DNA of 64,000 bases, from NCBI RefSeq assembly GCF_963921235.1, contig NC_086105.1:59396001-59460000 (forward strand), read 5' to 3'. How positions within the stretch are numbered: the stretch's first letter is position 1; the number at the start of each line of letters is the position of its first letter. Source of the stretch: Mobula hypostoma (lineage: Eukaryota). Under the pieces are notes generated by a model. The model saw only the letters and a program-made list of their open reading frames with translations, was not told the origin of the DNA and searched no databases. This document shows positions 6,847 through 54,350 of this stretch, piece by piece. A program made the translations under genes and the position numbers.

Positions 6847-6931
6847 ATTTTGCTTGCAGCTCAGCATTTTCCGTCTTCCTTTGTTCCAATTCCTTCTCTT
6901 TTCTTTCCAGTTCTCTGGAAATATATTCATT
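6847..6931 (-). CDS. CEP290: CEP290 exon 19 (85 nt)
   Basis: NEYISRELERKEKELEQRKTENAELQAK; donor gtaagt. Confidence 0.95.
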
Positions 6932-8268: not shown

Positions 8269-9615
8269 GGCCAGTTTAGTCTGATTTCAGTGTTTGCGAA
8301 GATGGAGTCCATTATTAATGGTGAAGTTTGGGGGTATTTGGAGGCGCACGATAAAGTAGGCCAAAGACAGCATGGTTTCCTTAAGGGAAAATCTGGCTTA
8401 ACAAATACAGCATGTAGGAATTTTTTGGGGAAATAACAGGATAGACAAAGGAAGAGTCAGTGGATGTTGTTTACTTGGATTTTCAGGAGGCAAGGTGCCG
8501 CACTTGAGCTGCTTAACAAGAGCCCATGCTATTACAGGAAAGATACTGACGTGGATAACTTCGGCTGATTAGCAGGAAGCAAAGAATGGGAACAAAGGGG
8601 GACTATTCTGGCTGGCTACCAGTGACTAATGGTGTTCCACAGCGGTCGGTATCAGGACTGCTTCTTTTCACATTATACGTCAACGATTTGGATGACAGAA
8701 TTGATGGCTTTACACCTAAGTTTGCAGACAATACAAAGGTAGCTGGAAGGGCAGGTAGTGTCGAGGGAACAGGGAGCCTGCAGAAGGACTTGGATCGAGA
8801 GAATGGGCAAAGTAGTGGAAGATGGAATATAGTTTAGGGAAATGTATGGTCACGCACTTTGGTAGAAGGAATAAAAGCATTGACTATATTCTAAATGTCG
8901 AGAAAATTCAGAAATCTGAGGTGCAAAGGGACCTGGGAGTCCTTTTGCAGGATTCCCTACAGGTTAACTTACAGGATGTGTCAGTGGAAATAAAAGCAAA
9001 TGCAATGCTAGCATTCTTTTCAAAAGATCTAGAGTTTAAAAGGATGTAATGCTGAGGCTTTAATGAGGTATTGGTCAGACCATTGGGAGCAGTTTTGGGC
9101 TCCTAATGCTGACAATGGGGAGGATCCAGAGGAGGTTCAAGAGAATAATTCCAGGAATGAAAAGGGTTAATGTATGAAGAGCATTTGATGGCTTTAGGCC
9201 TATACCCACTGGAGTTTAGAGGAAGAATGTGGGGGCTGGGGGTTGGATATGATTGAAACATATTGAATATTGAAAGGCCTAGATAGAGTGGATACGGAAG
9301 AGATGTTTCCTAAATTGGGCAAGTCTAGGACCAGAAGATCAGATCAGATGAAAGGGATGTCCAATTAGAACAGAGATGGAGGAATTTCTTTTGGAGTGTG
9401 GTGAATCTGTGGAATTCATTGTCATATATGAGTGTGGAGGACATAATTAAAGAACTATTAAAGCAGAGGTTGATAGGTTCATGATTAGAAAGGGCGTCAG
9501 AGGTTACAGGGAGAAGGCAGAAGCATGTGGTTGAGAGGGATAATAAATTAGTCATGATAGAATGACTGAGCAGACTCACTGGTCCGCATGCTTTAATTCT
9601 GCTCCTCTGTCTTAT
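8269..9615 (+). mobile_element. CR1-clade LINE, 5'-truncated and decayed
   Basis: QHGFLKGKS.LTN, WLPVTNGVPQ.SV.G.LLFTLYVNDLD, KFADNTK, QRDLGV; CR1 3' UTR. Confidence 0.9.
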
Positions 9616-11046
9616 GATCATGATGCTGCCTGACCTCCTGAGTTCCTCAAATATTTTGTGTGTGTTACTCTGGATTTCCAGCATCTGCAGAATCTTTTGT
9701 GTTCGATTTTGGGGCAGGAATCTTTTATGTTCACTACTGAGAGTAGATGAAAGCCTTGGTTTAACCCCTCATCTGAAAGACTATTGCACTTCCTCAGTAC
9801 TCTGAACTGGAATGTCAGCTGAGATTTCTTGGTATGGAATTTAAGCTAATGGCTTGACTTGTAACAACTTTGGAACAATGCTTTATTTTCCCTCCTTTTC
9901 CCGGGTTGCACAGATCCTACAACATTGGTTTAAAGGTTCCAATTTGACAGGAAAAGTAAGGAGGGGAACAGTAAGCAAAGGGTACAGATGCAAACAGAGA
10001 TGAGGTACAATTTATTTAGCCAGAGGGTGTTGAATCTGTTGAATTCATTGCCACAGACAGCTGTGGAGGACAGTCCATTGGATATATTCAAAGTGGAGGT
10101 TTATAACTTCTTGATTAGTCGGGGTGTTAAAGGTTAAGAGGAGAAGGCAGGAAAATGTGGTTGAAAAGGATAATAAATCAGCCATGATGGAATGGTAGAG
10201 CAGACTCGATAGACCAAGTGGCCTAATTCTGCTCCTATGTCTTATGGTCTAAAGAGGGATGGGGAAGTGTGAGACAGGGACAAGAAATAGGTGGACCAAG
10301 GAAGGGCAAAGGATGGTAGACAGATGGAGCCAGGCAGGGAAGGGGTGGGGAGACAGAGTTAAGGGAACCAGGTGGACAGGAGAAGAGAACGAAGGTGGAG
10401 GCAGCTGCTGTAGAACGCAAAGACTACCAGTGCTGGGACGTAATAGGTAAAGAAGTTGATAAGGGAAAGATGGAAAAGCATGTGGAATGAGATGTGGAGA
10501 GAATCTGGAGGATAAAACATGTGAGAAGAAATGGACGGAACTGAGGGTGGGGGAGTGGACAGAGACAGACATCACAAGAGACAAGGGTTACTTGAAATGC
10601 AAAGTCTAAGGGGTGATTGTAAGTGATGTGAATTCCAAAAAACACGAACATTGACTACTTGGTCAGTTCTGAGTTACAAGTTCTGTGAATCTCTCGGCTT
10701 TTTAAACTGTGGCAGATTGTAATGTTTCTTCTAAAGAACGAATCATTTTTCAAAATAAAAATTAAGGCATCCATTACCAAAAAAAAAGCATCTGGGCAAA
10801 AGTGGGAAGAAGTGGGAAAAACTATGGCTGTGAAGAATAAATTAACCAAATATTGAGAACTTATGATCATTAGATTTGCTTTGTCAATTTGTCTGTGCAT
10901 ATTTAACAAAGAATAATTTAATAATAGTGTAGTTTTAGAAGACAGGTCTCAGCTGTAAACATGCTATGTTTTGTTGTTATAGAACATAGGTAATGGTAAT
11001 ATTAAACAAGTTGTACAGCATTATCTGAATTAGAAACCTTTGACAA

Positions 11047-11321
11047 GGGCTGGCTGGTGGCGCAATGACATCGGCGCTGGACCCGGGAGCGGAGGATCCC
11101 GGGTTCAAAACCAGTCGGGTCCGCTCCCGAGTACGCTTTCCATTTGTGCCGGGTTGAGTGTCGAGATCGCAACTTGGCCCCGTAAAATAAAGGGAAAAAT
11201 ACTGCGAAATGGCTGTGTGAGGAGTGGCGCGCCACGCAGTCTCTCTCTCGTGGAGCCACACAGTCTCTTGTAAAAGCCATGAAAAAGACATCATCACGGA
11301 CGCACACACGCACCAAAAAAA
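11047..11321 (+). mobile_element. Young tRNA-derived SINE
   Basis: A box TGGCGCAATG, B box GGTTCAAAACC, CpGs retained, poly-A tail, 13-bp TSD aaacctttgacaa at 11034-11046 and 11322-11334. Confidence 0.9.
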
Positions 11322-11353
11322 AAACCTTTGACAAAAAGTTGAAAGAATCTAAC

Positions 11354-11881
11354 CTGTGATTTAAGCCTCGATAGTTCTACCCTTAGCTGCTCTATAAGAT
11401 CGTCTAATGGTTCGTGGTTTCTCGCTAGGTTCTCAGCTGCCTCAGTTGAACTGATTGCTTGCACTGGTTGAATACTCTCAGACTTGTGGACACCTTCCTC
11501 CCCAAGTGGCATCGTTGTATTATTTGTTTGTGTCTCTGCCAAAAATCCCTCTGATGACTGAGACCTGTTCGGTGTTTTCTGTTCATACTGATCAGTTTGT
11601 ACAGATTGTTCCTTTTCAAAACGTTCTATCACTCTCGGTAGGGAAAAAGACTGTCTTCCTCCCTGGGAAGATACAGAACTGTCCCATTGTACGGATTCCC
11701 TTTTAGAATTCCACGAATGCTTTTGTGGCCTTTCTGACTGCACTATTGACTTCCGAAGAATATCTGAAATCTGATCAGACATTTTCCTCAATGCCAGGGC
11801 CCTATAGTCTTCAGCATTATAAGATCCACCAGCAAAGCCTCTTCGTACTTTGTCATCGCTATCAATGTTTCTACCGCTGGC
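11354..11881 (-). CDS. CEP290: Candidate extra 528-nt in-frame CEP290 exon (176 aa)
   Basis: ctattttaatacag|GCC AGC GGT ... AAA TCA CAG|gttaga. 176 codons with no stop, phase 0-0, non-repetitive, ending in coiled-coil-like LDDLIEQLRVELSRLKSQ. Confidence 0.75.
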
Positions 11882-14158
11882 CTGTATTAAAATAGAGCAG
11901 ATTCAATTCTACATTTAATTATGTTATTTCCTCTCAACACCCTATTGTAGTATTGTAAATACTCTAAGCTAGAAATAGGTAAATAATTTCAAAGAGGAGG
12001 GAAAACTGCTACAAAATTACCTTAAATGAATCATCAAAAATTATTTATAGCTCATCATCTGGTTAGCATTGCCAACAAATATTTCTTGTGATAATTTGGA
12101 TTTAAATTTTGAGAAAATCTTTATCATTCAGTAGGTCACATATTGTAGGCTGGCTCATTTTAGAAATATTATCTCAACTGGCACTGGTCACACCAGTTAC
12201 TGCAAATGTCTGCACGACTGGAGCGATGGCTGTTACATTGTATGAGACATAACCATCTTGGAAATAATTTTTTTTACATTAATGCTTTATTAATCATAAT
12301 CGAGAATCAGAGAACTGTGGACACATTTCAGCATATCATGGAAAGCAGCCTCCCCTCCGTGGACTCTGTATAGCAGCCAGCATAACCTTAATGCATGGGG
12401 CAGCGTGGTAGTGTTGTATTAACATAATACTTTACAGTGCCAGCAATCAGGATTCAAATCCTCAGATTTTTCAAGGAGTCACATAGGTAGGAACTGTGGT
12501 CAGTTGAGGGAAAAAAAATGAGTGAACAAAAAACAGAACAACACAATTTAAATCCCACCCATGCAGTCAGGGAATTTAGCCAGTAAATTCTGTAATTAAA
12601 ATTTTCCAGTGTTGGTAATGGTGAAATGAAAATTCTTCAGTTGCCAGAGAAGGAAATCTGCCATTTTGAACACAAACAGGTTATTTGGTCCATCTAGTCC
12701 ATGCCAAACTATTATTCTGCCTAGACCTATCACCCACACCTGGACCATAGATCTCCATATCCCTCCATCCACGTACTTATCCAATCTTCTCTTAAATAAT
12801 GCAATTGGACGCGCATCCAACACGTACTCTGGCAGCTTGTTCCACAGTCGCACCATCCAGTGAGTGAAGAAGTTCCCCTTAAAAACTTCACCTTTCATCC
12901 TTTACCACTAGTTCAAATCTCACCCAACCTCACTGGAAAAAACCTCCTTGCATTTATCCTAACCATACAAAGTTCAAAGTATGTTTATCATCAAAGTATG
13001 CATAAATTATACAAGCCTGAGATTCATCTCCTTACTGGCAGCCACAAAACGAGAAACCCGAAAGAACCCATTACAAAATAAAGACTAACAAACACCTAAT
13101 GCACAGAGAGAAAAAAAAACACAAAATCATTCAAACAATGAAAGAAAGCAACAGCATTCAGAACTAAAGTGAGTCCATAGATGTGAAGCCCAGAGCAGGC
13201 CACAGCCTCAGCCTCAGTTCATCACACAGTGGAGCAAAACCGAGCTCACACAGCTGAAGTGAGTCCATAGATGCGAAGCCCAGAGTACCCGGAGCAGGCC
13301 ACAGCCTCAGTCTTGGAGTCCGTGCCGCAGAGAGCGGACTAAACGTTGCAGAGTAGTGAGCAGAACTGGCTTGATCCCAGCCTCCGGTCCCAACAACCAA
13401 CCTTTTCAATCCATCCAGCCTGGTGTTTAAATTCTCCAAACAATGGGTCGTCCCTCGTACTGTCACATCAGTACGTTTTGGGCCTGGATCCCGCTGCCAC
13501 GTTCTGGCCTGTACCTGACCTTTCCAAATGAACCCAGCACTTAGATCGATCCAACCTTGCTATTGATTTAAGTGGACAGGCTCTGAAACTCCTCTGCTGC
13601 GACTTGGATCAATCCAACCTTGCTATTGATTGAGGTGGACAGGCTCCGAAGCTCCTCTGCTTCCAACTTCTTTCCGCTTCGCACAGCCCAACTCTGTCTC
13701 AATCTCGCCCCTTGACTATGTGTAGACCTCGCTCCCACTTTGCATCGCGCACACACACACTTCAACCCTCAAGTCAGCTTCACCTTCACTTGCCTTATTG
13801 TTTGCAGTGATCATTTACCACAATTTTCCACAAAAAGTGTTACTAATAAAGTATTTAGTTGTATTTCTTGCTTTATGAACCACCAGTAAGCTGCTGTTAT
13901 TTTCAGTTGCGCCAACTAAAACCAGAAGGGTTACACCCCTCATAATTTTGTATTTTATTATGTGTCTTCACAGAACCACACAGGAATATGGTTGACTCCT
14001 AACTGCTCACTGAAATGGGCTAGTCAGCTTCTTAGCTCATGGGTACCAAGTCCTGACCTTGACCACAATAGAGGTATGTGCATAGGGGAGTGATCTGCAC
14101 ACCCACAGCTTCAATAAAGTTGATAGAATTTAAAATCAAGATAAAGCAAAGGCATTAC

Positions 14159-14259
14159 CTTACTCTTTAAATCTGAGGCGGATGTACCCAACGATGTTTT
14201 CGCTGTTGCTTCCCCATCAGTAAATCGATCGAACAACCCCAAATCATCTGATGAAAATG
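14159..14259 (-). CDS. CEP290: CEP290 exon 18 equivalent (101 nt, divergent)
   Basis: ctttatag|(A)FSSDDLGLFDRFTDGEATAKTSLGTSASDLKSK|gtaatg. Correct phase 1-0, weakly similar to human LTTEDLNL...QSK. Confidence 0.85.
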
Positions 14260-16027
14260 CTATAAAGTACAATATGTTAACTACTGCTTTTACTTAACAG
14301 TATTTATTGGTAACACTGCAGTATATGATGGTATGAGGTGTTGTAGGGTCACAGTGTCGTACGGCATGGAAACAGGCCCTTTGGCCCAACTCATCTCTGC
14401 TGACCAAGACACCCATTTGAGCTCGTCCCATTTGACTGTGTTTGACCCATATCTCTCTAAACCTTAACTATTCATTAAAATACCTTTTAAATCTTGTTAC
14501 TGTGTCTGTCTCAACCATTTCCTTCGGCAGCACATACCACATATATATCCCACTCTGTGTGACAAGTTAAACCTCAGGTTCATATTAAATCTTTTCCATC
14601 TCTTCTTAAACATATGCCCTCTAGTTCTTGATTCCACATCCCTGGAATAAAAGACTGTGTGCATTTATCCCCATCTACACCCATCATGATTTTTCACATC
14701 CCTCAACCTCACTTTAAGGAATAAACTGTCCAACCTTTCCCTATGACCCAATCCTTCAGATCATCATAAATCTTTGAACTTTTTCCTATAGAGCAGTGGT
14801 CCCCAACCTCTGGGCCGTGGACCGATACATTGCCGCGAAGAATGCAGTGGTGCAGCGGTAGTCCGAACGCACCCAGCATATCTTTAAGAAAAGAGCCGAA
14901 ATAAACAAGCTAATTAATTAGGTGCCGCCCGGCATGTAAATGTCGGCCCAGCTCAGAGGCGACCATTCACTATGAATACCCAAGTGTTCACTGCGGCAGA
15001 ACGTATGACTGGGGTCACACCAACAACTGTAAAGAAGCAAAATGAACTAAGAAAGTCTGCAGGGCAGAAAAAACAGAAATTTCTCCTCATAAGAGCAGGA
15101 TCATTTCCTCATAGATATATCATGTGTAATGCACTGTTCCTTTAAGTTCTATATATTGAACAAATCCCAGTCACTTTCTACACACACTGTGGTATAGTTT
15201 TACAGGTGAATTACCAAACCAGCCCCCTTTCTAAACTGATCCATACTGGTGACACTATGTTGTCCAAGTATCATCAACAGTTGTGGATGTTCCTCTGATG
15301 GTTCCATCAGACATAGCACTTGCCCTTTAAAAATGCCAGCAAACTTAGAGTCAAAGAGTTATAAGGTAATAGTGCACAGAAACAGGCCCTTCAGCAAACA
15401 TCTCTACAAGGGCTTCCGTGATTTCTTCTCTGACCTTCCGTAAGGTCTCGGGGTGTACTTGGTCAAGTCTTGGGGATATGCTCACCCTGCTTCCTGCTTA
15501 TGGAAAAATTTTTGCAATAACATTTACTCATGGAAATTCCACTAAACAATATTAAAAAAATGGCAGAGATAGGCCTTCAGCTACCATGTAATAACACCGC
15601 TAATTTGAATTTAACCTCACCTCAACATTCCTTCCTGTTCCCAGTAACACTCAATTTCCCTGTGAACCAAATACCTCAGCCTTGAATATAATCAATTACT
15701 CCCAGGGATGGGAAACTAAAAACTAGAGCGTAAAGGTTTAAGAGAGAGGGGAAAGATGTAAAATGGGTTTCTTTACCCAGATGGCAGTTGATATACAGAA
15801 CAAGCTTCCGGAGGGAATGCTTTAGACAGGTACAATTACAACATTTAAAAGACATTTGGATAAGTACATGGATAGGTTGGGTCTGGAAGGATATGGGTCA
15901 AACACAGAAAAATGCCTAGTAAGCACCATGGTCGGCATGGATGAGCTCGGCTAACTTGGATAATTCTCTGAGATAAAGAATTCCAAAGATTCACACACCT
16001 TAAGAGAAGAAATTTCTTTGCACCTAC

Positions 16028-16907
16028 TGTTACGAGAATACACATAAAATTAAGATGTTTGCTGGCCTGGGCTAGCATCAGTGGCATCAGCAGTTGGTCT
16101 GCCACCTGCCCTCAGGGGAAGGAGAGATAAGGAACAATGGAGCAGCGTCTGGAGATGTGTAATGAAGGGATGTGGGAGAGAGAGCTGTCTGGAGCGGCTC
16201 CCCCCTTTGAACCTTGAACTGTTTGAAGTGATGGACAGGCGATACCCCAGCAGGGGGATAAAAAGGGACAGGTTCGCTAAGGCGACACACACGCCACCCG
16301 AGGTAACAAGACCCTGGAAGCGGTGCGCCTCTCACGAGTGGGTGAGAAGTGCCAGACAACGACAAGGGTGGAAAGGTACGATCAGCGGGAACCCGGTGTG
16401 TGTCCGCCCTTGCCTGGGTGCCGGGTTCACTGCAAAGGATCGACCGCATCTGGAGGAGGGGTCACAGTCGGTGACCTCAGGTGACATCACCAAGGACCCG
16501 CCCAAAAGCTGTTTGTGAGCCATCTCGCTGGTCTGTGAGCCATCTTGCTGGTCTGTGAGTGAAGCAGTGTTCTGAATGATCAGTTGTTCCTATTCTATCT
16601 CTCTCTTCCCCCACGTTGTCCACCGCCATGGCAACGATTACTGCGAACTGAACTACTAACTGGACTGAACTTTGAGTCATTTTGAAATTGGTCATTTACC
16701 CCTAGACGACGATAGAGCTTGATTGATGCTGTTATCTTAATGCTGTGCACATGTGTGTTTATCATCACTGAACTGTTGCATTTATTATCCTTTCGATTAC
16801 TGTGTTGCTTGTTTCTTTAATAAAACTTTCTTAGTTCTAGTACTCCAGACTCCAACTGAGTGATCCATTTCTGCTGGTTTGGCAACCCAGTTACGGGGTA
16901 CGTAACA
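16028..16907 (+). mobile_element. Solo LTR (Ty3/Gypsy-like)
   Basis: TGTTACG...CGTAACA termini, 4-bp TSD CTAC, TATA-like GATAAAAA and AATAAA; interrupts a CR1 fragment. Confidence 0.9.
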
Positions 16908-17254
16908 CTACATATTAAATGGATAAATGTTTACTCTTAAACTATACCCCATAGTTCTAGATTCCCCTACACTGAGTATGTCAAATCCACTCAGCATCTT
17001 TTAATTTCAAATATACTTCATCTGGACTGTAATGTGTACTGGCCCAATTGGCTCACCTCATTAGCCAACTCTGTCATCCCAGGACTGAATTCAGCGAACC
17101 TCACAGAACTATGTTCATTGCAATATAATTTTCTTTCCAGTATCCAGCGTTGGCAGACTTTTTAAAATCAACTTCTACTGTTTGTTAAATTTCTGTATTT
17201 CATGCAAGATTCCAAGAAATCTTAATAATATATTAAAATGAAACTAAAACATAC

Positions 17255-17342
17255 CTATAGAACTTGCACATGTGCTTTTATCTTGGGCCATCTTGCGAAT
17301 TTGCCTCTTTAACACTAGTCTTTCTTCCTCTAGGCGTTCAAT
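17255..17342 (-). CDS. CEP290: CEP290 exon 17 (88 nt)
   Basis: IERLEEERLVLKRQIRKMAQDKSTCASSI; donor gtatgt. Confidence 0.95.
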
Positions 17343-17437
17343 CTGAAATTGGGAGTGTTGTGAGCATTTGGATTTATAAATGAAACAAACTTACCAAAGC
17401 CAAGCAGGTACATGGCAGGCTATTATAAATAACCAAC

Positions 17438-23538: not shown

Positions 23539-23711
23539 AGATTCATAAGCCCTCAAACGAATTAGTGATTCCCCCAGTTCCTTGTCTTTTTCTTTTGCAT
23601 CTTTCTCTGCAATCTCTGCAATTCGTTGTGCTTCAATGGCTGTTTTCTCCGATGCCCGTAGCTTCTCCTGTAGTGCTCCGATTCTGGATTGCTGATTAAG
23701 TGCTGGAAAAC
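23539..23711 (-). CDS. CEP290: CEP290 exon 14 (173 nt; alternative in-frame acceptor at 23702)
   Basis: (S)FPALNQQSRIGALQEKLRASEKTAIEAQRIAEIAEKDAKEKDKELGESLIRLRAYES; donor gtaagt. Confidence 0.9.
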
Positions 23712-36382: not shown

Positions 36383-37790
36383 AATACAAGAGATGCTGGA
36401 AATCCAGAATAACACGTAGAAAAAGCTGGAGTAGCTCAGCAGATCAGGCAGCATCTATGGAAATGAAAATAGTCAATGTTTTGGGCCAAGGCTCTTCATC
36501 AGGACTGGAAAGGAAGGTGGGAAGAAGACAGAATAAGAAGGTGGGTGAAGAGGAGGAGTACAAGCTAGATGATGATAGGTGAAGCCAGGTAGGTGAGGGA
36601 GGTGGAATGAAGTGAGAAGCTGGGAGGTGATAGGTGGGACAGGTAAAGGGCTGGTGAGGAAGTAATCTGTTCGAAGAGGAGAGTTAACCAAGGGAGAAAA
36701 GAAAGGAGGAGGGGCACCAAGGGTAGGTTTTAGGCACGTGAGGAGAACAGGTAAGAGGGGAACCAGAGCAGGGAATGGAAGAATGGGGGAGGGGAAAAAT
36801 TATCGAAAGTTAGAGATATCAATGTTCATGCCGTCAGGTTGGAGGCTACCCAGATAGAATGAGGAGTTGCCCCTCCAACCTGAGAGTGGCCTCATCTGAC
36901 AACAGATCGACATATCTGAATGAGAATGGAGACTGGAATTAAAATGGTTGGCCACCAGGAATTCTTGCTTTTTGCGAATGGAACAAAGGTGATCAATCAA
37001 GTGGCCCCCCAATCTACATCGGGTCTCACCAATATAAAGGAAGCCAGGAGCACTGGTACGATAGACCACCACAACAGATATACAGATGAAGTGTTGCCTC
37101 ACCTGGAAGGACTGTCTGGGGCCCTGAATGGAGATGAGGGAGTAGGTTAAAAGGGCAGGTGTAGCACTTCTTTCACATACAGGGATAAGTGCCAGGAGGG
37201 TATTGGTGGAGAGGGACAAACGGACAAGGAAATCATGGAGGGACTGATCCCTACGGAAAGTGAAGAGTGGCGGGGAGGGAGAGTAAAGATGTGTTTGGTA
37301 GTAGGATCCCACTGAACAAGGCAGAATGATGTCCTGGATGCAAGGGTTCATGGGGTTCATAACTCTACTCCTGTTAAGGCGGTGAGAAGATGAGGTGAGG
37401 GTGGATGCACAGCAAATGCAGGAGATGCAGGTGAGGGCAGCAAAGTGGTGGAGGAAGGGAAACCCAGTGTCTTTGAAGAAGGATAGCTCTGATGTTCTGG
37501 AAAGGTTCATCCTGGGAATAGATGCAGCAGAGACAAAGGAACTGAGAAAAGGGAATGGCATTTTTACAGGAGACAGGGTGAAACAAGGTATAGGCGAGAT
37601 AACCATGGGAATTGGTAGGTTTATAAAAGATATTAGGAGACAGTTGTCCCCAGAGATGGAGACAGAGAGATTGAGAAAGAGAAGAGAGATGTCAGAAATG
37701 GACCAAGTGTATTTAAGGGTAGGGTGGGAGTTGGAAGCAAAGTTGATGAAATTGACAAACTCAACAGAGATGCTTGAAGCAACACCATTT
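36383..37790 (-). mobile_element. Older Penelope-like element remnant (RT C-terminus, GIY-YIG and 3' end)
   Basis: ORF 36800-37870 contains FINFASNSHPTLKYTWSIS...FLNLSVSI and GFLYIGETRCRLGGHLIDHL...LGSLQPDGMNIDISNFR; frameshifted. Confidence 0.9.
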
Positions 37791-38174
37791 TTCTCCCTAC
37801 ATAATGATTCACTGTGGCATATTATATAGATGAGCAGTATTGGCAAGGAAACTGCTAGACAGAATACCAAAAATATCCTGCTTTTCTTTGAATGAAGTAC
37901 TGGAACTTTTATTAACTTCCTAGATACAGCTTTGGTTTAATATCTCCTTTGATTCACGACACATTGGATAATGGACCACCTCCTCAGTATTGCACTGGAG
38001 TGCCAGCTAGGACTTATGGGTTCTCTATTTAAACCCAGTTAGAAAGTACTAAGTGTAAGATAAAAAGAATTCAGCTTACTTTGGAGGTTCCAGATCAAAC
38101 AAGATGAAGAGAAGTAAACAGAAGTTTGAGCAGAACATAAAAATTATATGGACCTCTCAGACTTGTGCACTCAC

Positions 38175-48807: not shown

Positions 48808-49131
48808 TACTGAGAATTGCAAGTCCAAGCAAAAGGATGTAGAACCCTTTCATTTGATAGAACGAATACCTGTACCTACTTCACAAACCACCCACCCTAC
48901 CTGCTACCCGCCCCCCCATCTTCTTGTAGAAGAGTCTGTGGTCCCCATTTTCCTGTAGAAGAGTCTGTGGTCCCCACAAATAAAAAAAACTAGAATGGGA
49001 GCAAGTCACCCTCGATCACAAGGAACCGCCGGAGTAGACATTTCCAAAAAATCTTTGACGGATCCTCGACCTGCCATACCCCACCAGGGCATTATAGGAT
49101 ACCACCCGCTCCGCCTTCCCCCTCTCGCTAC

Positions 49132-49360
49132 GGCCTTACGGGTCACCTTACATCCCCTCCCCGCTACCTTCTGCTCCCAGCCCGGGACCGTACGAACCGC
49201 CAACACACCACTCCCCGCTTCCTAGCCTCCATCCCGGGGCCTTACGGGTCACCCTACATCCCCTCCCCGCTACCTTCTGCTCCCAGCCCGGGACCGTACG
49301 AACCACCAACACACCACTCCCCGCTTCCCAGCCTCCATCCCGGGGCCTTACGGGTCACCC
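49132..49360. repeat. 106-bp GC-rich tandem repeat, about 2.2 copies
   Basis: ggccttacgggtcacc recurs at 49132, 49238 and 49344, and the units are nearly identical. Confidence 0.92.
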
Positions 49361-49433
49361 AAGCCCCCACCCGGGGCCGTACAGGACGCCCCGAGCCTGC
49401 GATTAGCAGGACCCCGCCCAGAGATGCTCTCAC

Positions 49434-49550
49434 CTCCCTCGGGCCGGAGTCTAGATCAGCGCGGGGAAGAAAGTGGGCCCGGTACCGGCTGCTAGGCGAC
49501 CACTCAAGCTCTTCACGGCAGCTGGCAACCCGCTTTACGGCAAAACGAGC
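49434..49550 (-). other. CEP290: Putative non-coding exon 1 of CEP290 (5' end approximate)
   Basis: In a CpG island, with minus-strand donor GAG|gtgaga at 49434/49433. The ATG exon has an acceptor only 12 nt upstream of the ATG, so an upstream non-coding exon is required. Confidence 0.6.
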
Positions 49551-50179
49551 ATGCTCGCGAGACTCGGCGCCAAAAGAGGGCGGGGCCTGGGAGGGGAGGG
49601 ATGCGGAGGCATCGGTGATGAGGGTAGTGATGGGGCAATGGAGCATCTGTGACCATCCATCTCATGCAGAACCCTCATGACTTTATAAACTTCAGTAGGT
49701 CATTCCTCATTCTTCACCATCCAGGCCACTTGCACAATGGTTTCTACCCCCTTCCTCTCCAGTCCTGATGAAGAGTCTCAACCCAAAAGAACAACTCTAT
49801 TCCTTTCCACGGTTTTGGCCTGACCTGCTCAGTTCCTCCAGCATTTCTTTTGGTTTACTCCAGATTTTCAGCATCTGCAGAATCTCTTGTGTTTTTAATG
49901 GGGTTTGGGGTATGCACATGGAGTTATACCTCACTGACATAAGCCCTTAAGATGCCATGTCCAATCTGACCTTTTTAATCTGTCTACAGTCTTTCCATTT
50001 GTCTGCTCGCTGGCACAACGACTCCTGGATCAGGCACAGGAAACAACAAAGAAGAAAGATTAAATAGGCCGGGGCCCTTTCAGATAGATGAGGTGTGATC
50101 TTATCAAAGCATACAGTTCTTAAGGAGATGGACAGGATAGCAGACCGGGCTACACCTGCCCATTCACCTCCTATCTTCA

Positions 50180-51220: not shown

Positions 51221-53009
51221 CCCTTAAACACCACGCGCCTGAATGCTAGATATTCTGTTGCAAGTTTTATCGTGGTAAGTCATGAACTCCACACCACTGG
51301 GGAGCTGATTAGGGTTTCTGTCCAAAATCGTGGTAAGGAAGACTGAGAAAAAATGCTGGCTGATGATGCAGCCTTCCTTGACACCAGAATGCAAAGCGAC
51401 TGGGTCTGCTGCATTGAGATCACATCCTGGGTATCATCATGACGCAGATGTAAAATGGAGACGGATTTCTTCAGGCAGCCAAATTTAACAAGGATGCTCC
51501 CTCATGGGTGGTAGAATTAAATTTACTGTCAGAAAGGGTCACTTGTTGTGTTAATGTTGATCCTTGCATTTCTTGTAAAATGCTTCTCTTGAAGAGTACC
51601 TGAATCATCTATATATATTAGGCTTCCATGATTCCTTAAGGTTGTTATAGCTGGGGTGGTAATGGGGGTGAGTTCCCACTACCTATTAAATACTCCCAAT
51701 GGTGTGTATCTCAAATAGCCTCTGACAACCATGTCCATCTCGTGGCCTTTACGTAGGCTTAGCTACTAAGCCTGGCGAAACCGTTTCTGCTGACAGGAGA
51801 AAGGGCAAAGGCGGGTTACTGGCGCCTTAAAATCAGTCATTTTGGGAATTTGGGGTTCGTCAGCTGTGGTTGGTGGCTCATCTAGGAGAAGGAAAACTCC
51901 GATCTCAAACCTCCACTGCCTTGCAGCTATACCCACTCATGGGGAGGGCTTTGGGAGTAAGCCAGAGCTGGAATCCCTAAGGCAGTCCTACATTGAGTTC
52001 AATGTTGACTGGCAACTCCTGTGACGCTTCTGGTACCAAACTGTGACAATGTTTTCCGTCCCTTTGGATTCATCAGCCGTGTGGAGAGGGGGATCCTGCT
52101 ACATGGGCAACAGCTTGCTCACCATGTCATACTGCCTGGCTTGCACATCACATAAGCAGCTGAGACACAATGTCCATTGTCAATCCCAAACAGTGGAGGG
52201 CCTCAGTTGGCTTCCACCAAATAATGGTAAATGGGATTATTCTTGATAGGCGCCTGATGGTGGGATGAAGGGATTACTTCTATGTACTCTATGATTCTGA
52301 GTTACTGTATAACGAAGATCACATCTGGCTGGCATGCTTACAGAAGAACAGAACCCACACTGTGAACTCCTCATCACTTAGAGATACAGCCCAGTAACTG
52401 ACCTTTCTGACCCCAGAAGCCCTCGCCGCCAAAGTACACCCATCTGACAAATTAACCTAATAACGTACATCTTTGGAATGAGGAAGGAAACTTGAGCACC
52501 CAGAGTAAACCACAGAGTTACTGGGAGAATGTACAAACCCCTTACAGAAAGCGGCAGGAATTGAACCCCAAACTTGCAGCTGTCTACAGTGAAGCCTCAT
52601 GCTAACCACCACACTCCCATGCTGGCTAATTTGGAGAGCAACTCTGACTGTTAGGAGAGATGATTCAAGGGGAGCCTAGTGATAGCCTTGTATGACAATT
52701 CTCAGTACAAGTGGACCTGTTTGCTCTCTTGAGAATGGTCATGCCTCTGAGGTTGCTGGTTTGTCCTCCTCTCCCCACACGTGGGTAACAAGGCAGTTCT
52801 GATGGCTGTGCGTCTTACAAGTTGTTACACTTCATAAAAAGTGTGATGTGCTTCCAAAGGATTACTGAATAAATTGAATCTATTTTTTAATCTCAATATA
52901 TAGCAACCCCCTACAGATTTTAATTATTATTTATTTCACCCTAGTAAGATTTAGCTGTTTTTCTAAAATTTATAAACGATATTTTTCTTGATTTTCTGTG
53001 TATTATTGA

Positions 53010-53240
53010 TTTCCAGTCGTCACGTTTGAACATTGGAGTAGTTTTTGGTGAGAGGGAGCGCAGTTGGGCAGCAGACGATTCGTGGTCCGGACGTCATACT
53101 CGCAGCTGTTGCTGCAGCCCGGTCCGCGTGGGCGGACGGGATCGGCACGGACCGGAAGTGAGGTGCGGGGCTCGGGTCGGTGATGCCGCTGGAAAAGGCC
53201 GAGGGAGAAGTTGGAAGCGGCGTCTAGTCGATCAGGTAGA
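53010..53240 (+). promoter_or_regulatory. Second CpG island: divergent promoter and non-coding first exon (TMTC3 by synteny, unconfirmed)
   Basis: CpG cluster with GACGTCA (CRE-like) and ACCGGAAGTG (ETS/GABPA, 53151-53160). Candidate donor AG|gtgcgg at 53162/53163, then a strongly G-skewed plus strand. No coding exon found in the window. Confidence 0.55.
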
Positions 53241-54350
53241 GGGAGAGGAGGATGGGGAAGCGTGTTGTGGATTAAGTATGGGTTAGGGGGAGGGAGTGGT
53301 GGATGGTGAGGATGGGAAGATGTATTGTGGATCAGGTTGTGGATACGGGAGGAAGGAGTGAGAGGATAGGGAGATGTGTGATTGATAAGGTAGGGAAGAA
53401 GGGAGACTGAGGAGGGGGTGGTGAGAGTGGGGAAGGAGCGTCTAGTGAAGGGGGACAGTGAGAGGGCCAGGTAGGGGTAGAGAAAGGAGCGGTGGTGGAG
53501 GTGGGGTAAGGATGGGGAAGCAGCTTCTAGTGGATCACGTAGGGGAGAGGAGGGACTGAGGGTGGTGAGGTATGGGAGCAAGTGGTGGGGTGGGAAGGTA
53601 TGTTGTGGATCAGGGAGGAGGAGGGAGAGGGAAGGATGAGTCTGGAGGTGATGACGTGTGCTGTGGATCGGGTAGAGGAGAAAGGGGAGAAGAAGGAAAG
53701 GTGAGAGTTGGGAGGTGTGTGGTAGATTAAGTAGAAGAGAGGAAGTGGGTATTGGCGTTAGTTTATTATTGTCACATGTTCTGAGATATGGTGAAAAGTT
53801 TTTCTTGCACACTGTTCACACAGATTAGATCCTTACACAGTATATTGAGCTTGAACACGGTAAAACAATAACGATACAGAATAAAGTGTAAAATCTGCAG
53901 TGCAGGTAAACAATAAAGTGTGGGGTCATAGCAAGGTTGGATGTGAGGCCAAAAGTCCATTTTATCCGACTGAGTAGGGTTGGGAGGTGTATGGTTGATC
54001 AGATAGGGGAGAGGAGGGACCAGGGCTGATGGTGCGGAAGAGAAGGCAAGTTTCAATTTGATAGGGGAGAGGTTGGTGTGGGTGGGAAAGTGAGGTTGAG
54101 TATGTGAGGAGGGATGAGTGTGTGTTGGATGGTTCAGGAGGGAGATGGTTAGAGCCATGTGTAGGTGGGTGCTTAATATATTGGGGTGTGGAGAGTAGTG
54201 TGGGAGATAGTTGGGGCAGGTATAGTATTGGAGGGAGGTGGAGTTTGGTTAACAATGCCTTGGTACAGGTGGGCAATTTGGGACAGGAGTGGGGAAGAGT
54301 GAAAAGCTTAGTAAGAGGACACCTGATAGGAGTTCAGGTTTGGCTGGGGA
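53230..54350 (+). repeat. G/purine-rich degenerate low-complexity repeat (interrupted by a LINE 3' fragment at about 53755-53965)
   Basis: Recurring tgttgtggatcagg and ggggagaggaggga motifs. Confidence 0.7.

What the first reader, a model, noticed from the sequence alone, without database searches (positions are those of the whole stretch)
11354..11881. Unexpected 528-nt in-frame exon inside CEP290 between the exon 18 and 19 equivalents
Seen: a unique (non-TE) 176-codon stop-free block on the gene's strand, bounded by ctattttaatacag| and CAG|gttaga. It is phase 0-0, matching exon 18 (ends phase 0) and exon 19 (starts phase 0), so it can be included or skipped without a frameshift. The peptide ASGRNIDSDDKVRRG...LDDLIEQLRVELSRLKSQ is Ser/Gln/Glu-rich with a C-terminal heptad helix. 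Knowledge: the human protein, as I recall it, runs directly ...EAQSK|NEFLSRE... with no such insert, while almost all other exons here match human sizes. Inference: a lineage-restricted or ancestral cassette exon that gives a longer, possibly tissue-specific (retina, testis, sensory cilia) transition-zone isoform.
Basis: partly seen in the sequence, partly recalled or inferred. Interest (0 to 1): 0.78.

Follow-up and report, generated by a model that had tools for sequence, protein, structure and literature searches.

The report
Extra conserved CEP290 exon in rays
A ray's copy of the cilium gene CEP290 carries an extra 528-base in-frame exon that a skate-like relative has also kept open, so it is very likely a real coding exon adding a flexible 176-residue insert to the protein, but I could not show when or how often it is spliced in.

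Summary
Window 11354-11881 (minus strand) is a unique 176-codon stop-free block with AG and GT borders. It is phase 0-0 between the CEP290 exon 18 and exon 19 equivalents.

A search of 1.84 billion representative proteins gave one hit: a genomic ORF from a related fish, probably a skate. It holds the same exon (159 codons) with the same borders.
- The two copies differ at 26% of aligned bases, yet both frames are open. Neutral simulation gives 1-1.5%.
- All four internal indels are multiples of three.

The amino-acid sequence itself is barely constrained: omega is 0.78 overall (not significant), about 1.0 in the disordered middle and 0.44 in the two predicted helices.

AlphaFold gives helix, about 95 mostly disordered residues, then helix in both species. 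The last helix shares a heptad register with exon 19.

Runs that hold a constitutive CEP290 exon lack this one, but it is only a guess that they are RNA.

Best reading: a real CEP290 exon shared by rays and skates, probably alternative, that lengthens the hinge of the protein. Tissue specificity, age and annotation status are untested. Interest is modest.

The parts
11354..11881 (-). Candidate CEP290 exon: 528 nt, 176 codons, phase 0-0
   Evidence: Stop-free translation. Orthologous 477-nt open exon at L001 292-768. Only frame 0 is open in both species.
11882..11905 (-). Acceptor region: pyrimidine-rich tract and AG (ctgctctattttaatacag)
   Evidence: Read. Nearly identical in the relative, with one substitution and one 1-nt indel in the last ~21 nt of intron.
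11346..11353 (-). Donor gttagatt: GT present, T at +3, so a weak match to the GTRAGT consensus
   Evidence: Read. The last 12 exon bases and first 8 intron bases are identical in the relative. The other mapped CEP290 donors in the window are gtaag, gtaat, gtatg or gtac.
11735..11815 (-). N-terminal conserved helix, residues 23-49 (AEDYRALALRKMSDQISDILRKSIVQS)
   Evidence: AlphaFold pLDDT 81-95. A helix is also predicted for the relative's copy folded alone. Identity to the relative is 55-70% in sliding 20-residue windows.
11450..11734 (-). Ser/Gln/Glu-rich middle, residues 50-144, mostly disordered; one short low-confidence helix at 85-93
   Evidence: pLDDT 34-48 over most of it. Outside the helices (this middle plus the first 22 residues) omega is 1.03. 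Apart from one single-codon gap at the start of the N-terminal helix, all indels lie here or in the first 21 residues.
11357..11449 (-). C-terminal conserved helices, residues 145-154 and 157-175 (...SSTEAAE...PLDDLIEQLRVELSRLKS)
   Evidence: pLDDT up to 95. The relative's copy gives pLDDT 84-90. 65-75% identity. One heptad register runs on into exon 19, with 9 of 13 a/d positions hydrophobic.
14159..14247 (-). Upstream CEP290 exon (exon 18 equivalent), 89 nt, ends in phase 0
   Evidence: Translation xDLGLFDRFTDGEATAKTSLGTSASDLKSK.
6847..6931 (-). Downstream CEP290 exon (exon 19 equivalent), 85 nt, starts in phase 0
   Evidence: Translation NEYISRELERKEKELEQRKTENAELQAK.

Best explanation
The block is a genuine coding exon of CEP290 in rays and skates. 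It is spliced between the exon 18 and exon 19 equivalents in at least a meaningful share of transcripts. It inserts 176 residues at the one non-coiled hinge of the protein: a conserved helix, then about 95 mostly disordered Ser/Gln/Glu-rich residues, then a conserved helix that continues in heptad register into the coiled coil of exon 19.

What selection visibly protects is the reading frame and the two helices, not the sequence of the middle. A stop or frameshift in an included exon would truncate an essential cilium protein. That alone explains why the frame is kept while the linker drifts.

The weak donor, the length divisible by three, the conserved intron flanks and the exon's absence from runs that hold a constitutive CEP290 exon make an alternative (cassette) exon the more likely mode.

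Shown: the anatomy, orthology, frame conservation and helix-linker-helix prediction.

Inferred: splicing into CEP290 mRNA, alternative use, and any effect on the reach or flexibility of CEP290 at the transition zone.
For: - Anatomy and phase.
- The open frame of 202 codons is the fourth longest of all six frames in the window.
- It is not a repeat. There is no second copy in the window, and one relative among 1.84 billion representatives and among the 97-308 aa proteins of 5.8 billion clusters.
- The ortholog on three genomic contigs (P0001-P0003; L001, L002) has the same AG and GT borders.
- 459 aligned nt carry 120 differences. Random substitution at that level leaves the frame open in only 0.9-1.5% of trials.
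- The four internal indels are 57, 9, 6 and 9 nt. Only one of the six indels in the aligned intron flanks is a multiple of three.
- Every other frame has 4-17 stops in both species.
- Nonsynonymous divergence in the predicted helices is half that elsewhere (0.148 against 0.279, Fisher p 0.006) at equal synonymous divergence. ML omega is 0.44 in the helices.
- Both copies give a helix-disorder-helix model. The relative's was folded alone.
- Heptad continuity with exon 19.
- Runs X6, X8-X10 and X16-X18 hold all words of a constitutive exon, and X11-X14 and X19 hold 0.67-0.93. None of them holds a twentieth of this exon's words.
Against: - There is no RNA evidence at all.
- Over the whole exon omega is 0.78, not different from 1 (p 0.33). 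Outside the helices it is 1.03.
- Differences are spread evenly over the three codon positions: 38, 41, 41.
- The Nei-Gojobori ratio of 0.54 is no more than transition bias gives (p 0.24).
- The exon (74% identity) is hardly better conserved than the alignable intron flanks (68-78%).
- The helix result is borderline by likelihood (p 0.059), and the helices were partly defined on a model that saw the alignment.
- The ortholog was found through an ORF-based protein database, which can only return relatives whose frame is open.
- The kind of runs X6-X19 is a guess. They could be exon-capture DNA, which would say nothing about splicing.
Confidence: 0.6

Rival explanations
1. It is a constitutive CEP290 exon of rays and skates, present in every transcript and probably already in their gene models. 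It looks unexpected only against the mammalian gene.
For: Frame and splice sites are conserved between two distant batoid-like genomes. The exon is in phase with its neighbours. The kind of the runs that lack it is only guessed.
Against: No protein of any length among 1.84 billion cluster representatives contains it, apart from one genomic read-through ORF. No transcript-derived fragment of 97-308 aa contains it. Run X6 holds all words of a constitutive exon and none of this exon's. The donor has T at +3. These are all arguments from absence.
Confidence: 0.13
2. It is a non-functional intronic ORF, either a dead former exon or a chance open frame. It is still open in two slowly evolving genomes and is not spliced into mRNA today.
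For: Omega is about 1 over most of its length, and substitutions are spread evenly over codon positions. Identity is no higher than in the neighbouring intron. No RNA-like run holds more than 13% of its words. The protein database is biased towards open frames.
Against: Neutral drift at the observed divergence keeps the frame in about 1% of trials, and four of four indels are 3n, so the joint chance is of the order of 1e-4. The helices show reduced nonsynonymous change at unchanged synonymous change. The 20 bases across the donor are identical.
Confidence: 0.15
3. It is an exon of a different transcript on the same strand, such as a nested gene or an alternative CEP290 start or end, and not an internal cassette of full-length CEP290.
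For: Nothing positive. It is not excluded only because no transcript could be examined.
Against: Both an acceptor and a donor are conserved. The frame and phase match both CEP290 neighbours, and the last helix continues the heptads of exon 19. No other protein family matches it.
Confidence: 0.05

Closest known systems
Canonical vertebrate CEP290 (NPHP6) as known from human and mouse, exon 18 to exon 19 junction
   Same: Same gene and same place. The 88-nt and 85-nt exons on either side have the sizes I recall for human exons 17 and 19. The flanking peptides (IERLEEERL......SK|NE..SRE...) read like the human ones.
   Different: This rests on memory and was not tested here. The ray's exon 18 equivalent is 89 nt, against about 113 nt recalled for human.
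Photoreceptor-specific, Musashi-promoted 'switch-like' exons in cilium genes, including one in mouse Cep290 (PMC4991804)
   Same: An in-frame alternative exon in CEP290 would belong to this kind. That paper shows that CEP290 does have a tissue-switched exon in mouse retina.
   Different: In mouse the splicing was shown by RNA-seq and RT-PCR. Here no RNA was seen. The passages read do not say where the mouse exon lies, and I have no evidence that it is this one. The exon here is very large (528 nt) and is known so far only from a ray and a skate-like fish.
Human CEP290 intron 26 pseudoexon (c.2991+1655A>G), from general knowledge
   Same: Intronic sequence of CEP290 that can be spliced in as an extra exon.
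   Different: That one is a 128-nt disease-causing insertion with a premature stop, created by a mutation. This one is open, in phase and conserved between species.

Membership tests
Coding exon of the CEP290 transcription unit | Lies on the gene's strand inside the gene, between recognised exons | tested here: met
   Minus strand, between 14247-14159 and 6931-6847. The further CEP290 exons found are 24878-24755, 23702-23539, 19692-19530, about 17545-17438, 17342-17255 and 3602-3445.
Coding exon of the CEP290 transcription unit | AG acceptor and GT donor, with a frame and phase that fit both neighbours | tested here: met
   phase 0-0, 176 codons.
Coding exon of the CEP290 transcription unit | Reading frame conserved in orthologous sequence beyond neutral expectation | tested here: met
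   L001 and L002 hold a 159-codon open frame with the same borders. Indels are 57, 9, 6 and 9 nt. Neutral retention is 0.9-1.5%.
Coding exon of the CEP290 transcription unit | Purifying selection on the amino-acid sequence (omega below 1) | tested here: inconclusive
   Omega is 0.78 overall (p 0.33), 0.44 in the helices (p 0.059) and 1.03 elsewhere. Fisher test of helix against the rest for nonsynonymous change gives p 0.006.
Coding exon of the CEP290 transcription unit | Spliced junction reads or cDNA joining it to the neighbouring exons | not testable with these tools
Coding exon of the CEP290 transcription unit | Present in known or annotated CEP290 proteins | tested here: inconclusive
   No full-length protein among the representatives matches it. 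Isoforms may be hidden inside 50% clusters, and the 90% database could be searched only for proteins of 97-308 aa.
Alternatively spliced cassette exon | Length divisible by three, so that skipping keeps the frame | tested here: met
   528 nt in the ray and 477 nt in the relative.
Alternatively spliced cassette exon | Both inclusion and skipping forms observed in RNA | tested here: inconclusive
   Twelve small runs hold most or all words of a constitutive exon (share 0.67-1.00), but none holds a twentieth of this exon's words. Their kind (RNA or capture DNA) is only guessed, and no inclusion form was seen.
Alternatively spliced cassette exon | Weak splice site and conserved flanking intron sequence | tested here: met
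   The donor gttaga has T at +3, while the other mapped donors are gtaag, gtaat, gtatg or gtac. About 60 nt upstream and 25 nt downstream align well with the relative.
Exonised or relic transposable element | Many copies, or similarity to transposon proteins or repeats | tested here: not met
   Single copy in the window. One relative in 1.84 billion representatives. No Pfam family above its cut-off.

The most novel reading that the evidence does not exclude
The exon is an old cartilaginous-fish, or even jawed-vertebrate, CEP290 cassette that bony vertebrates lost. It is included only in particular ciliated cells such as photoreceptors or sperm. There the 176-residue helix-linker-helix module lengthens the hinge of CEP290 and changes the geometry or regulation of the transition zone.
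Probability: 0.12. Interest if true: 0.55.

Novelty: new member of a known kind. Interest (0 to 1): 0.3.

Why it matters
CEP290 is the most often mutated gene in Leber congenital amaurosis and a major Joubert and Meckel syndrome gene. How its long coiled coil spans the ciliary transition zone is still debated.

A natural isoform with 176 extra residues at the hinge between the N-terminal region and the rest of the rod would show that this site tolerates, or makes use of, a large flexible insert. That bears on the design of shortened or exon-skipped therapeutic CEP290 forms.

In evolutionary terms it would be one more exon kept by cartilaginous fishes and absent from mammals. The weak constraint on most of the peptide and the missing RNA evidence keep its present weight modest.

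Tried and rejected
- **Read laying.** I sent window 11345-17344 with runs X1, X2, X6 and X16, so that the exon 17>18 junction would serve as a control. Only local scripts read the whole window file.
- **Pfam.** DUF7295 matches at E 3e-4, below its cut-off. It is absent for the relative's copy, so I rejected it as chance.
- **ESM Atlas.** Best score 0.79, uninformative.
- **Nei-Gojobori dN/dS.** The ratio of 0.54 with Fisher p 0.005 looked like purifying selection. I rejected it after a null with the observed transition bias and stops forbidden gave the same synonymous count, and after ML gave omega 0.78.
- **Profile search with the ray and relative alignment.** No further relatives.
- **Metagenome DNA pattern scan of the most conserved block.** No matches.
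- **Papers.** Nothing on an extra CEP290 exon at this place, nor on the SRA accessions.
- **Paralogous origin.** The peptide matches no other part of the window.
- **tRNA scan around the exon.** Nothing found.
- **Full-length CEP290 proteins.** They could not be searched, because a spliced query cannot be given by reference.

Full report

Yes. It is preceded by ctgctctattttaatacag and followed by gttaga.

The stop-to-stop open frame runs from 11902 to 11297, 202 codons. That is the fourth longest of all six frames of the 64-kb window.

The upstream exon is 14247-14159 (89 nt) and ends in phase 0 with ...DLKSK. The downstream exon is 6931-6847 (85 nt) and starts in phase 0 with NEYISRELE.

The local exon chain on the minus strand is:
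- 19692-19530 (163 nt)
- about 17545-17438
- 17342-17255 (88 nt)
- 14247-14159 (89 nt)
- the candidate, 11881-11354 (528 nt)
- 6931-6847 (85 nt)
- 3602-3445

. That comparison rests on memory.

**2. Is it a repeat or a chance ORF?**

It is not a repeat.
- It has no second copy in the window and resembles no other CEP290 exon there.
- It matches no Pfam family above threshold.
- A phmmer search of 1.84 billion cluster representatives returned a single protein. A transposon ORF would return thousands.

**3. The one relative**

P0001 (214 aa) and its cluster mates P0002 and P0003 come from short genomic contigs assembled from three sequencing runs: SRR089296, SRR090301 and SRR17051962. The protein reads through both splice sites into intron on each side, so it is a genomic ORF and not a cDNA.

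Earlier notes of this scan call the window's genome a lesser devil ray (unchecked). The age of two of the runs fits the little skate genome project. I could not verify either organism, so I speak of 'the relative'.

The aligned DNA shows:
- the same acceptor (ctgctctatttt-acacag|GCCA);
- an identical stretch of 20 bases across the donor (CTTAAATCACAG|gttagatt);
- a 477-nt, 159-codon open exon at L001 292-768.

**4. What is conserved, and what is not**

Over 459 aligned exon bases there are 120 differences, so identity is 74%. The alignable intron flanks are 68-78% identical. In plain identity the exon is therefore barely better kept than its surroundings.

Three things do stand out.
- **The frame is open in both species.** Every other frame has 4-17 stops. 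Scattering 120 substitutions with the observed transition bias leaves the frame open in only 0.9-1.5% of 20,000 trials.
- **All internal indels are multiples of three.** The four are 57, 9, 6 and 9 nt. The six indels in the aligned intron flanks are 8, 17, 1, 1, 3 and 26 nt. Under neutrality, four of four has a chance of about 0.012. Together with the open frame, the joint chance is of the order of 1e-4.
- **Change is unevenly spread.** In the predicted helices the nonsynonymous proportion is 0.148 against 0.279 elsewhere (Fisher p 0.006). The synonymous proportions are equal at 0.35 and 0.39.

**5. A correction to my own first reading**

The Nei-Gojobori ratio of 0.54 (Fisher p 0.005) is not evidence of selection.
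- Differences are spread evenly over the three codon positions: 38, 41, 41.
- A null with the observed transition bias and only stops forbidden gives 34.6 +/- 4.3 synonymous differences, against 37.7 observed (p 0.24).
- A pairwise codon-model fit gives omega 0.78 for the whole exon (p 0.33 against 1), 0.44 for the helices (p 0.059) and 1.03 for the rest.

So selection has protected the frame and, probably, the two helices. The sequence of the middle has drifted freely.

One caveat on ascertainment. The relative was found through a database of predicted ORFs, which can only return open copies. Copies broken in other species would have gone unseen.

**6. What the peptide looks like**

AlphaFold on the three-row alignment gives helices at residues 23-49 (pLDDT 81-95) and at 145-154 and 157-175 (pLDDT up to 95). 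The residues between them are mostly disordered, apart from one short low-confidence helix at 85-93.

The relative's copy, folded alone, gives the same layout: a helix at 2-57, a disordered stretch, then a helix at 142-159.

The middle is rich in Ser, Gln and Glu. Apart from one single-codon gap at the start of the N-terminal helix, all indels lie outside the helices.

Placed before exon 19, the last helix shares one heptad register with the start of the exon 19 coiled coil. Nine of 13 a/d positions are hydrophobic, against 7 of 13 for the exon 18 to exon 19 join.

**7. Expression**

This is the weak point. The decisive test was junction reads. My one read-laying run covered exon 17, exon 18 and the candidate.

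What remains is indirect.
- No run holds half of the candidate's 53 sampled words. Four runs of four organisms hold 7-24%.
- A constitutive 164-nt CEP290 exon (23539-23702) is held at 0.67-1.00 by twelve small runs of three organisms.
- None of those twelve holds even a twentieth of the candidate's words. One of them, X6, is listed at 0.00.

If those runs are RNA, the exon is skipped or rare in them. If they are exon-capture DNA, which their size and dates also allow, they say nothing. The tool marks their kind as a guess.

Two further points from the protein searches:
- No transcript-like protein fragment of 97-308 aa contains the exon.
- No representative of any length does, apart from the genomic ORF.

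These are arguments from absence, without a positive control.

**8. Most likely explanation**

It is a real CEP290 exon shared by rays and skates. It is included often enough that a stop or frameshift in it would be harmful, which explains frame conservation with a drifting linker.

The following make an alternative cassette exon more likely than a constitutive one:
- the weak donor (T at +3);
- the length divisible by three in both species;
- the conserved intron flanks;
- the indirect signs of skipping.

The insert sits in the only non-coiled stretch of this part of the protein, the exon 17-18 linker. The simplest functional guess is a longer, more flexible hinge whose last helix extends the following coiled coil by about three heptads. 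Splicing, tissue pattern and function are all inferred.

Rivals:
- constitutive exon of batoids (0.13);
- dead or unused ORF still open by luck in slowly evolving genomes (0.15);
- exon of another transcript (0.05).

**9. Comparison with what is known**

CEP290 is known to have a tissue-switched exon in mouse photoreceptors, promoted by Musashi 1 (PMC4991804). Nothing I read places that exon here.

I found no paper on an extra exon between exons 18 and 19, nor on CEP290 in cartilaginous fishes.

Whether public gene models of rays already include the exon could not be checked. Full-length proteins were out of reach of the length-limited search, and a spliced query cannot be given by reference.

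**10. Verdict**

- The exon reading is supported by comparative evidence.
- The cassette, tissue-specific and ancestral readings are untested.

This is an apparently undescribed exon of a well-known gene, a known kind of thing. Interest is modest at 0.3.

Noticed in passing
window 11047-11322 (flanking repeats at 11323-11334 and 11035-11046): A 276-nt insertion lies about 20-30 nt downstream of the exon's donor. It is flanked by a 12-nt direct repeat (TTGTCAAAGGTT) and is absent from the relative's contig. On the plus strand it has a tRNA-like head and an A-rich tail, so it looks like a SINE that landed next to the splice site in the ray lineage. ARAGORN calls no tRNA there.
   Followed up: partly
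window 36803-37936 (-), 53006-53815 (-), 48994-49677 (+), 8586-8837 (+): These are the three longest open frames of the window (378, 270 and 228 codons), plus a shorter ORF with a reverse-transcriptase-like motif (...LFTLYVNDLDD...). They lie in CEP290 introns or beside the gene and are probably transposon remains.
   Followed up: no
window 14159-14247 (-): The exon 18 equivalent is 89 nt, against about 113 nt as I recall the human exon. The neighbouring 163, 88 and 85-nt exons keep the human sizes. The hinge-coding part of the gene therefore varies in length apart from the extra exon (the human sizes are from memory).
   Followed up: no
window 11957-12018 and 10814-11047 against L001 174-235 and 784-1022: Intron sequence on both sides of the exon still aligns with the relative at 68-78% identity. 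Either the two genomes evolve slowly or these flanks carry splicing signals.
   Followed up: partly
I did not examine them and sent them nowhere afterwards.
   Followed up: no
window 13539-13661: Two tandem copies of a 63-nt unit, 90% alike, lie in the intron between exon 18 and the candidate exon.
   Followed up: no
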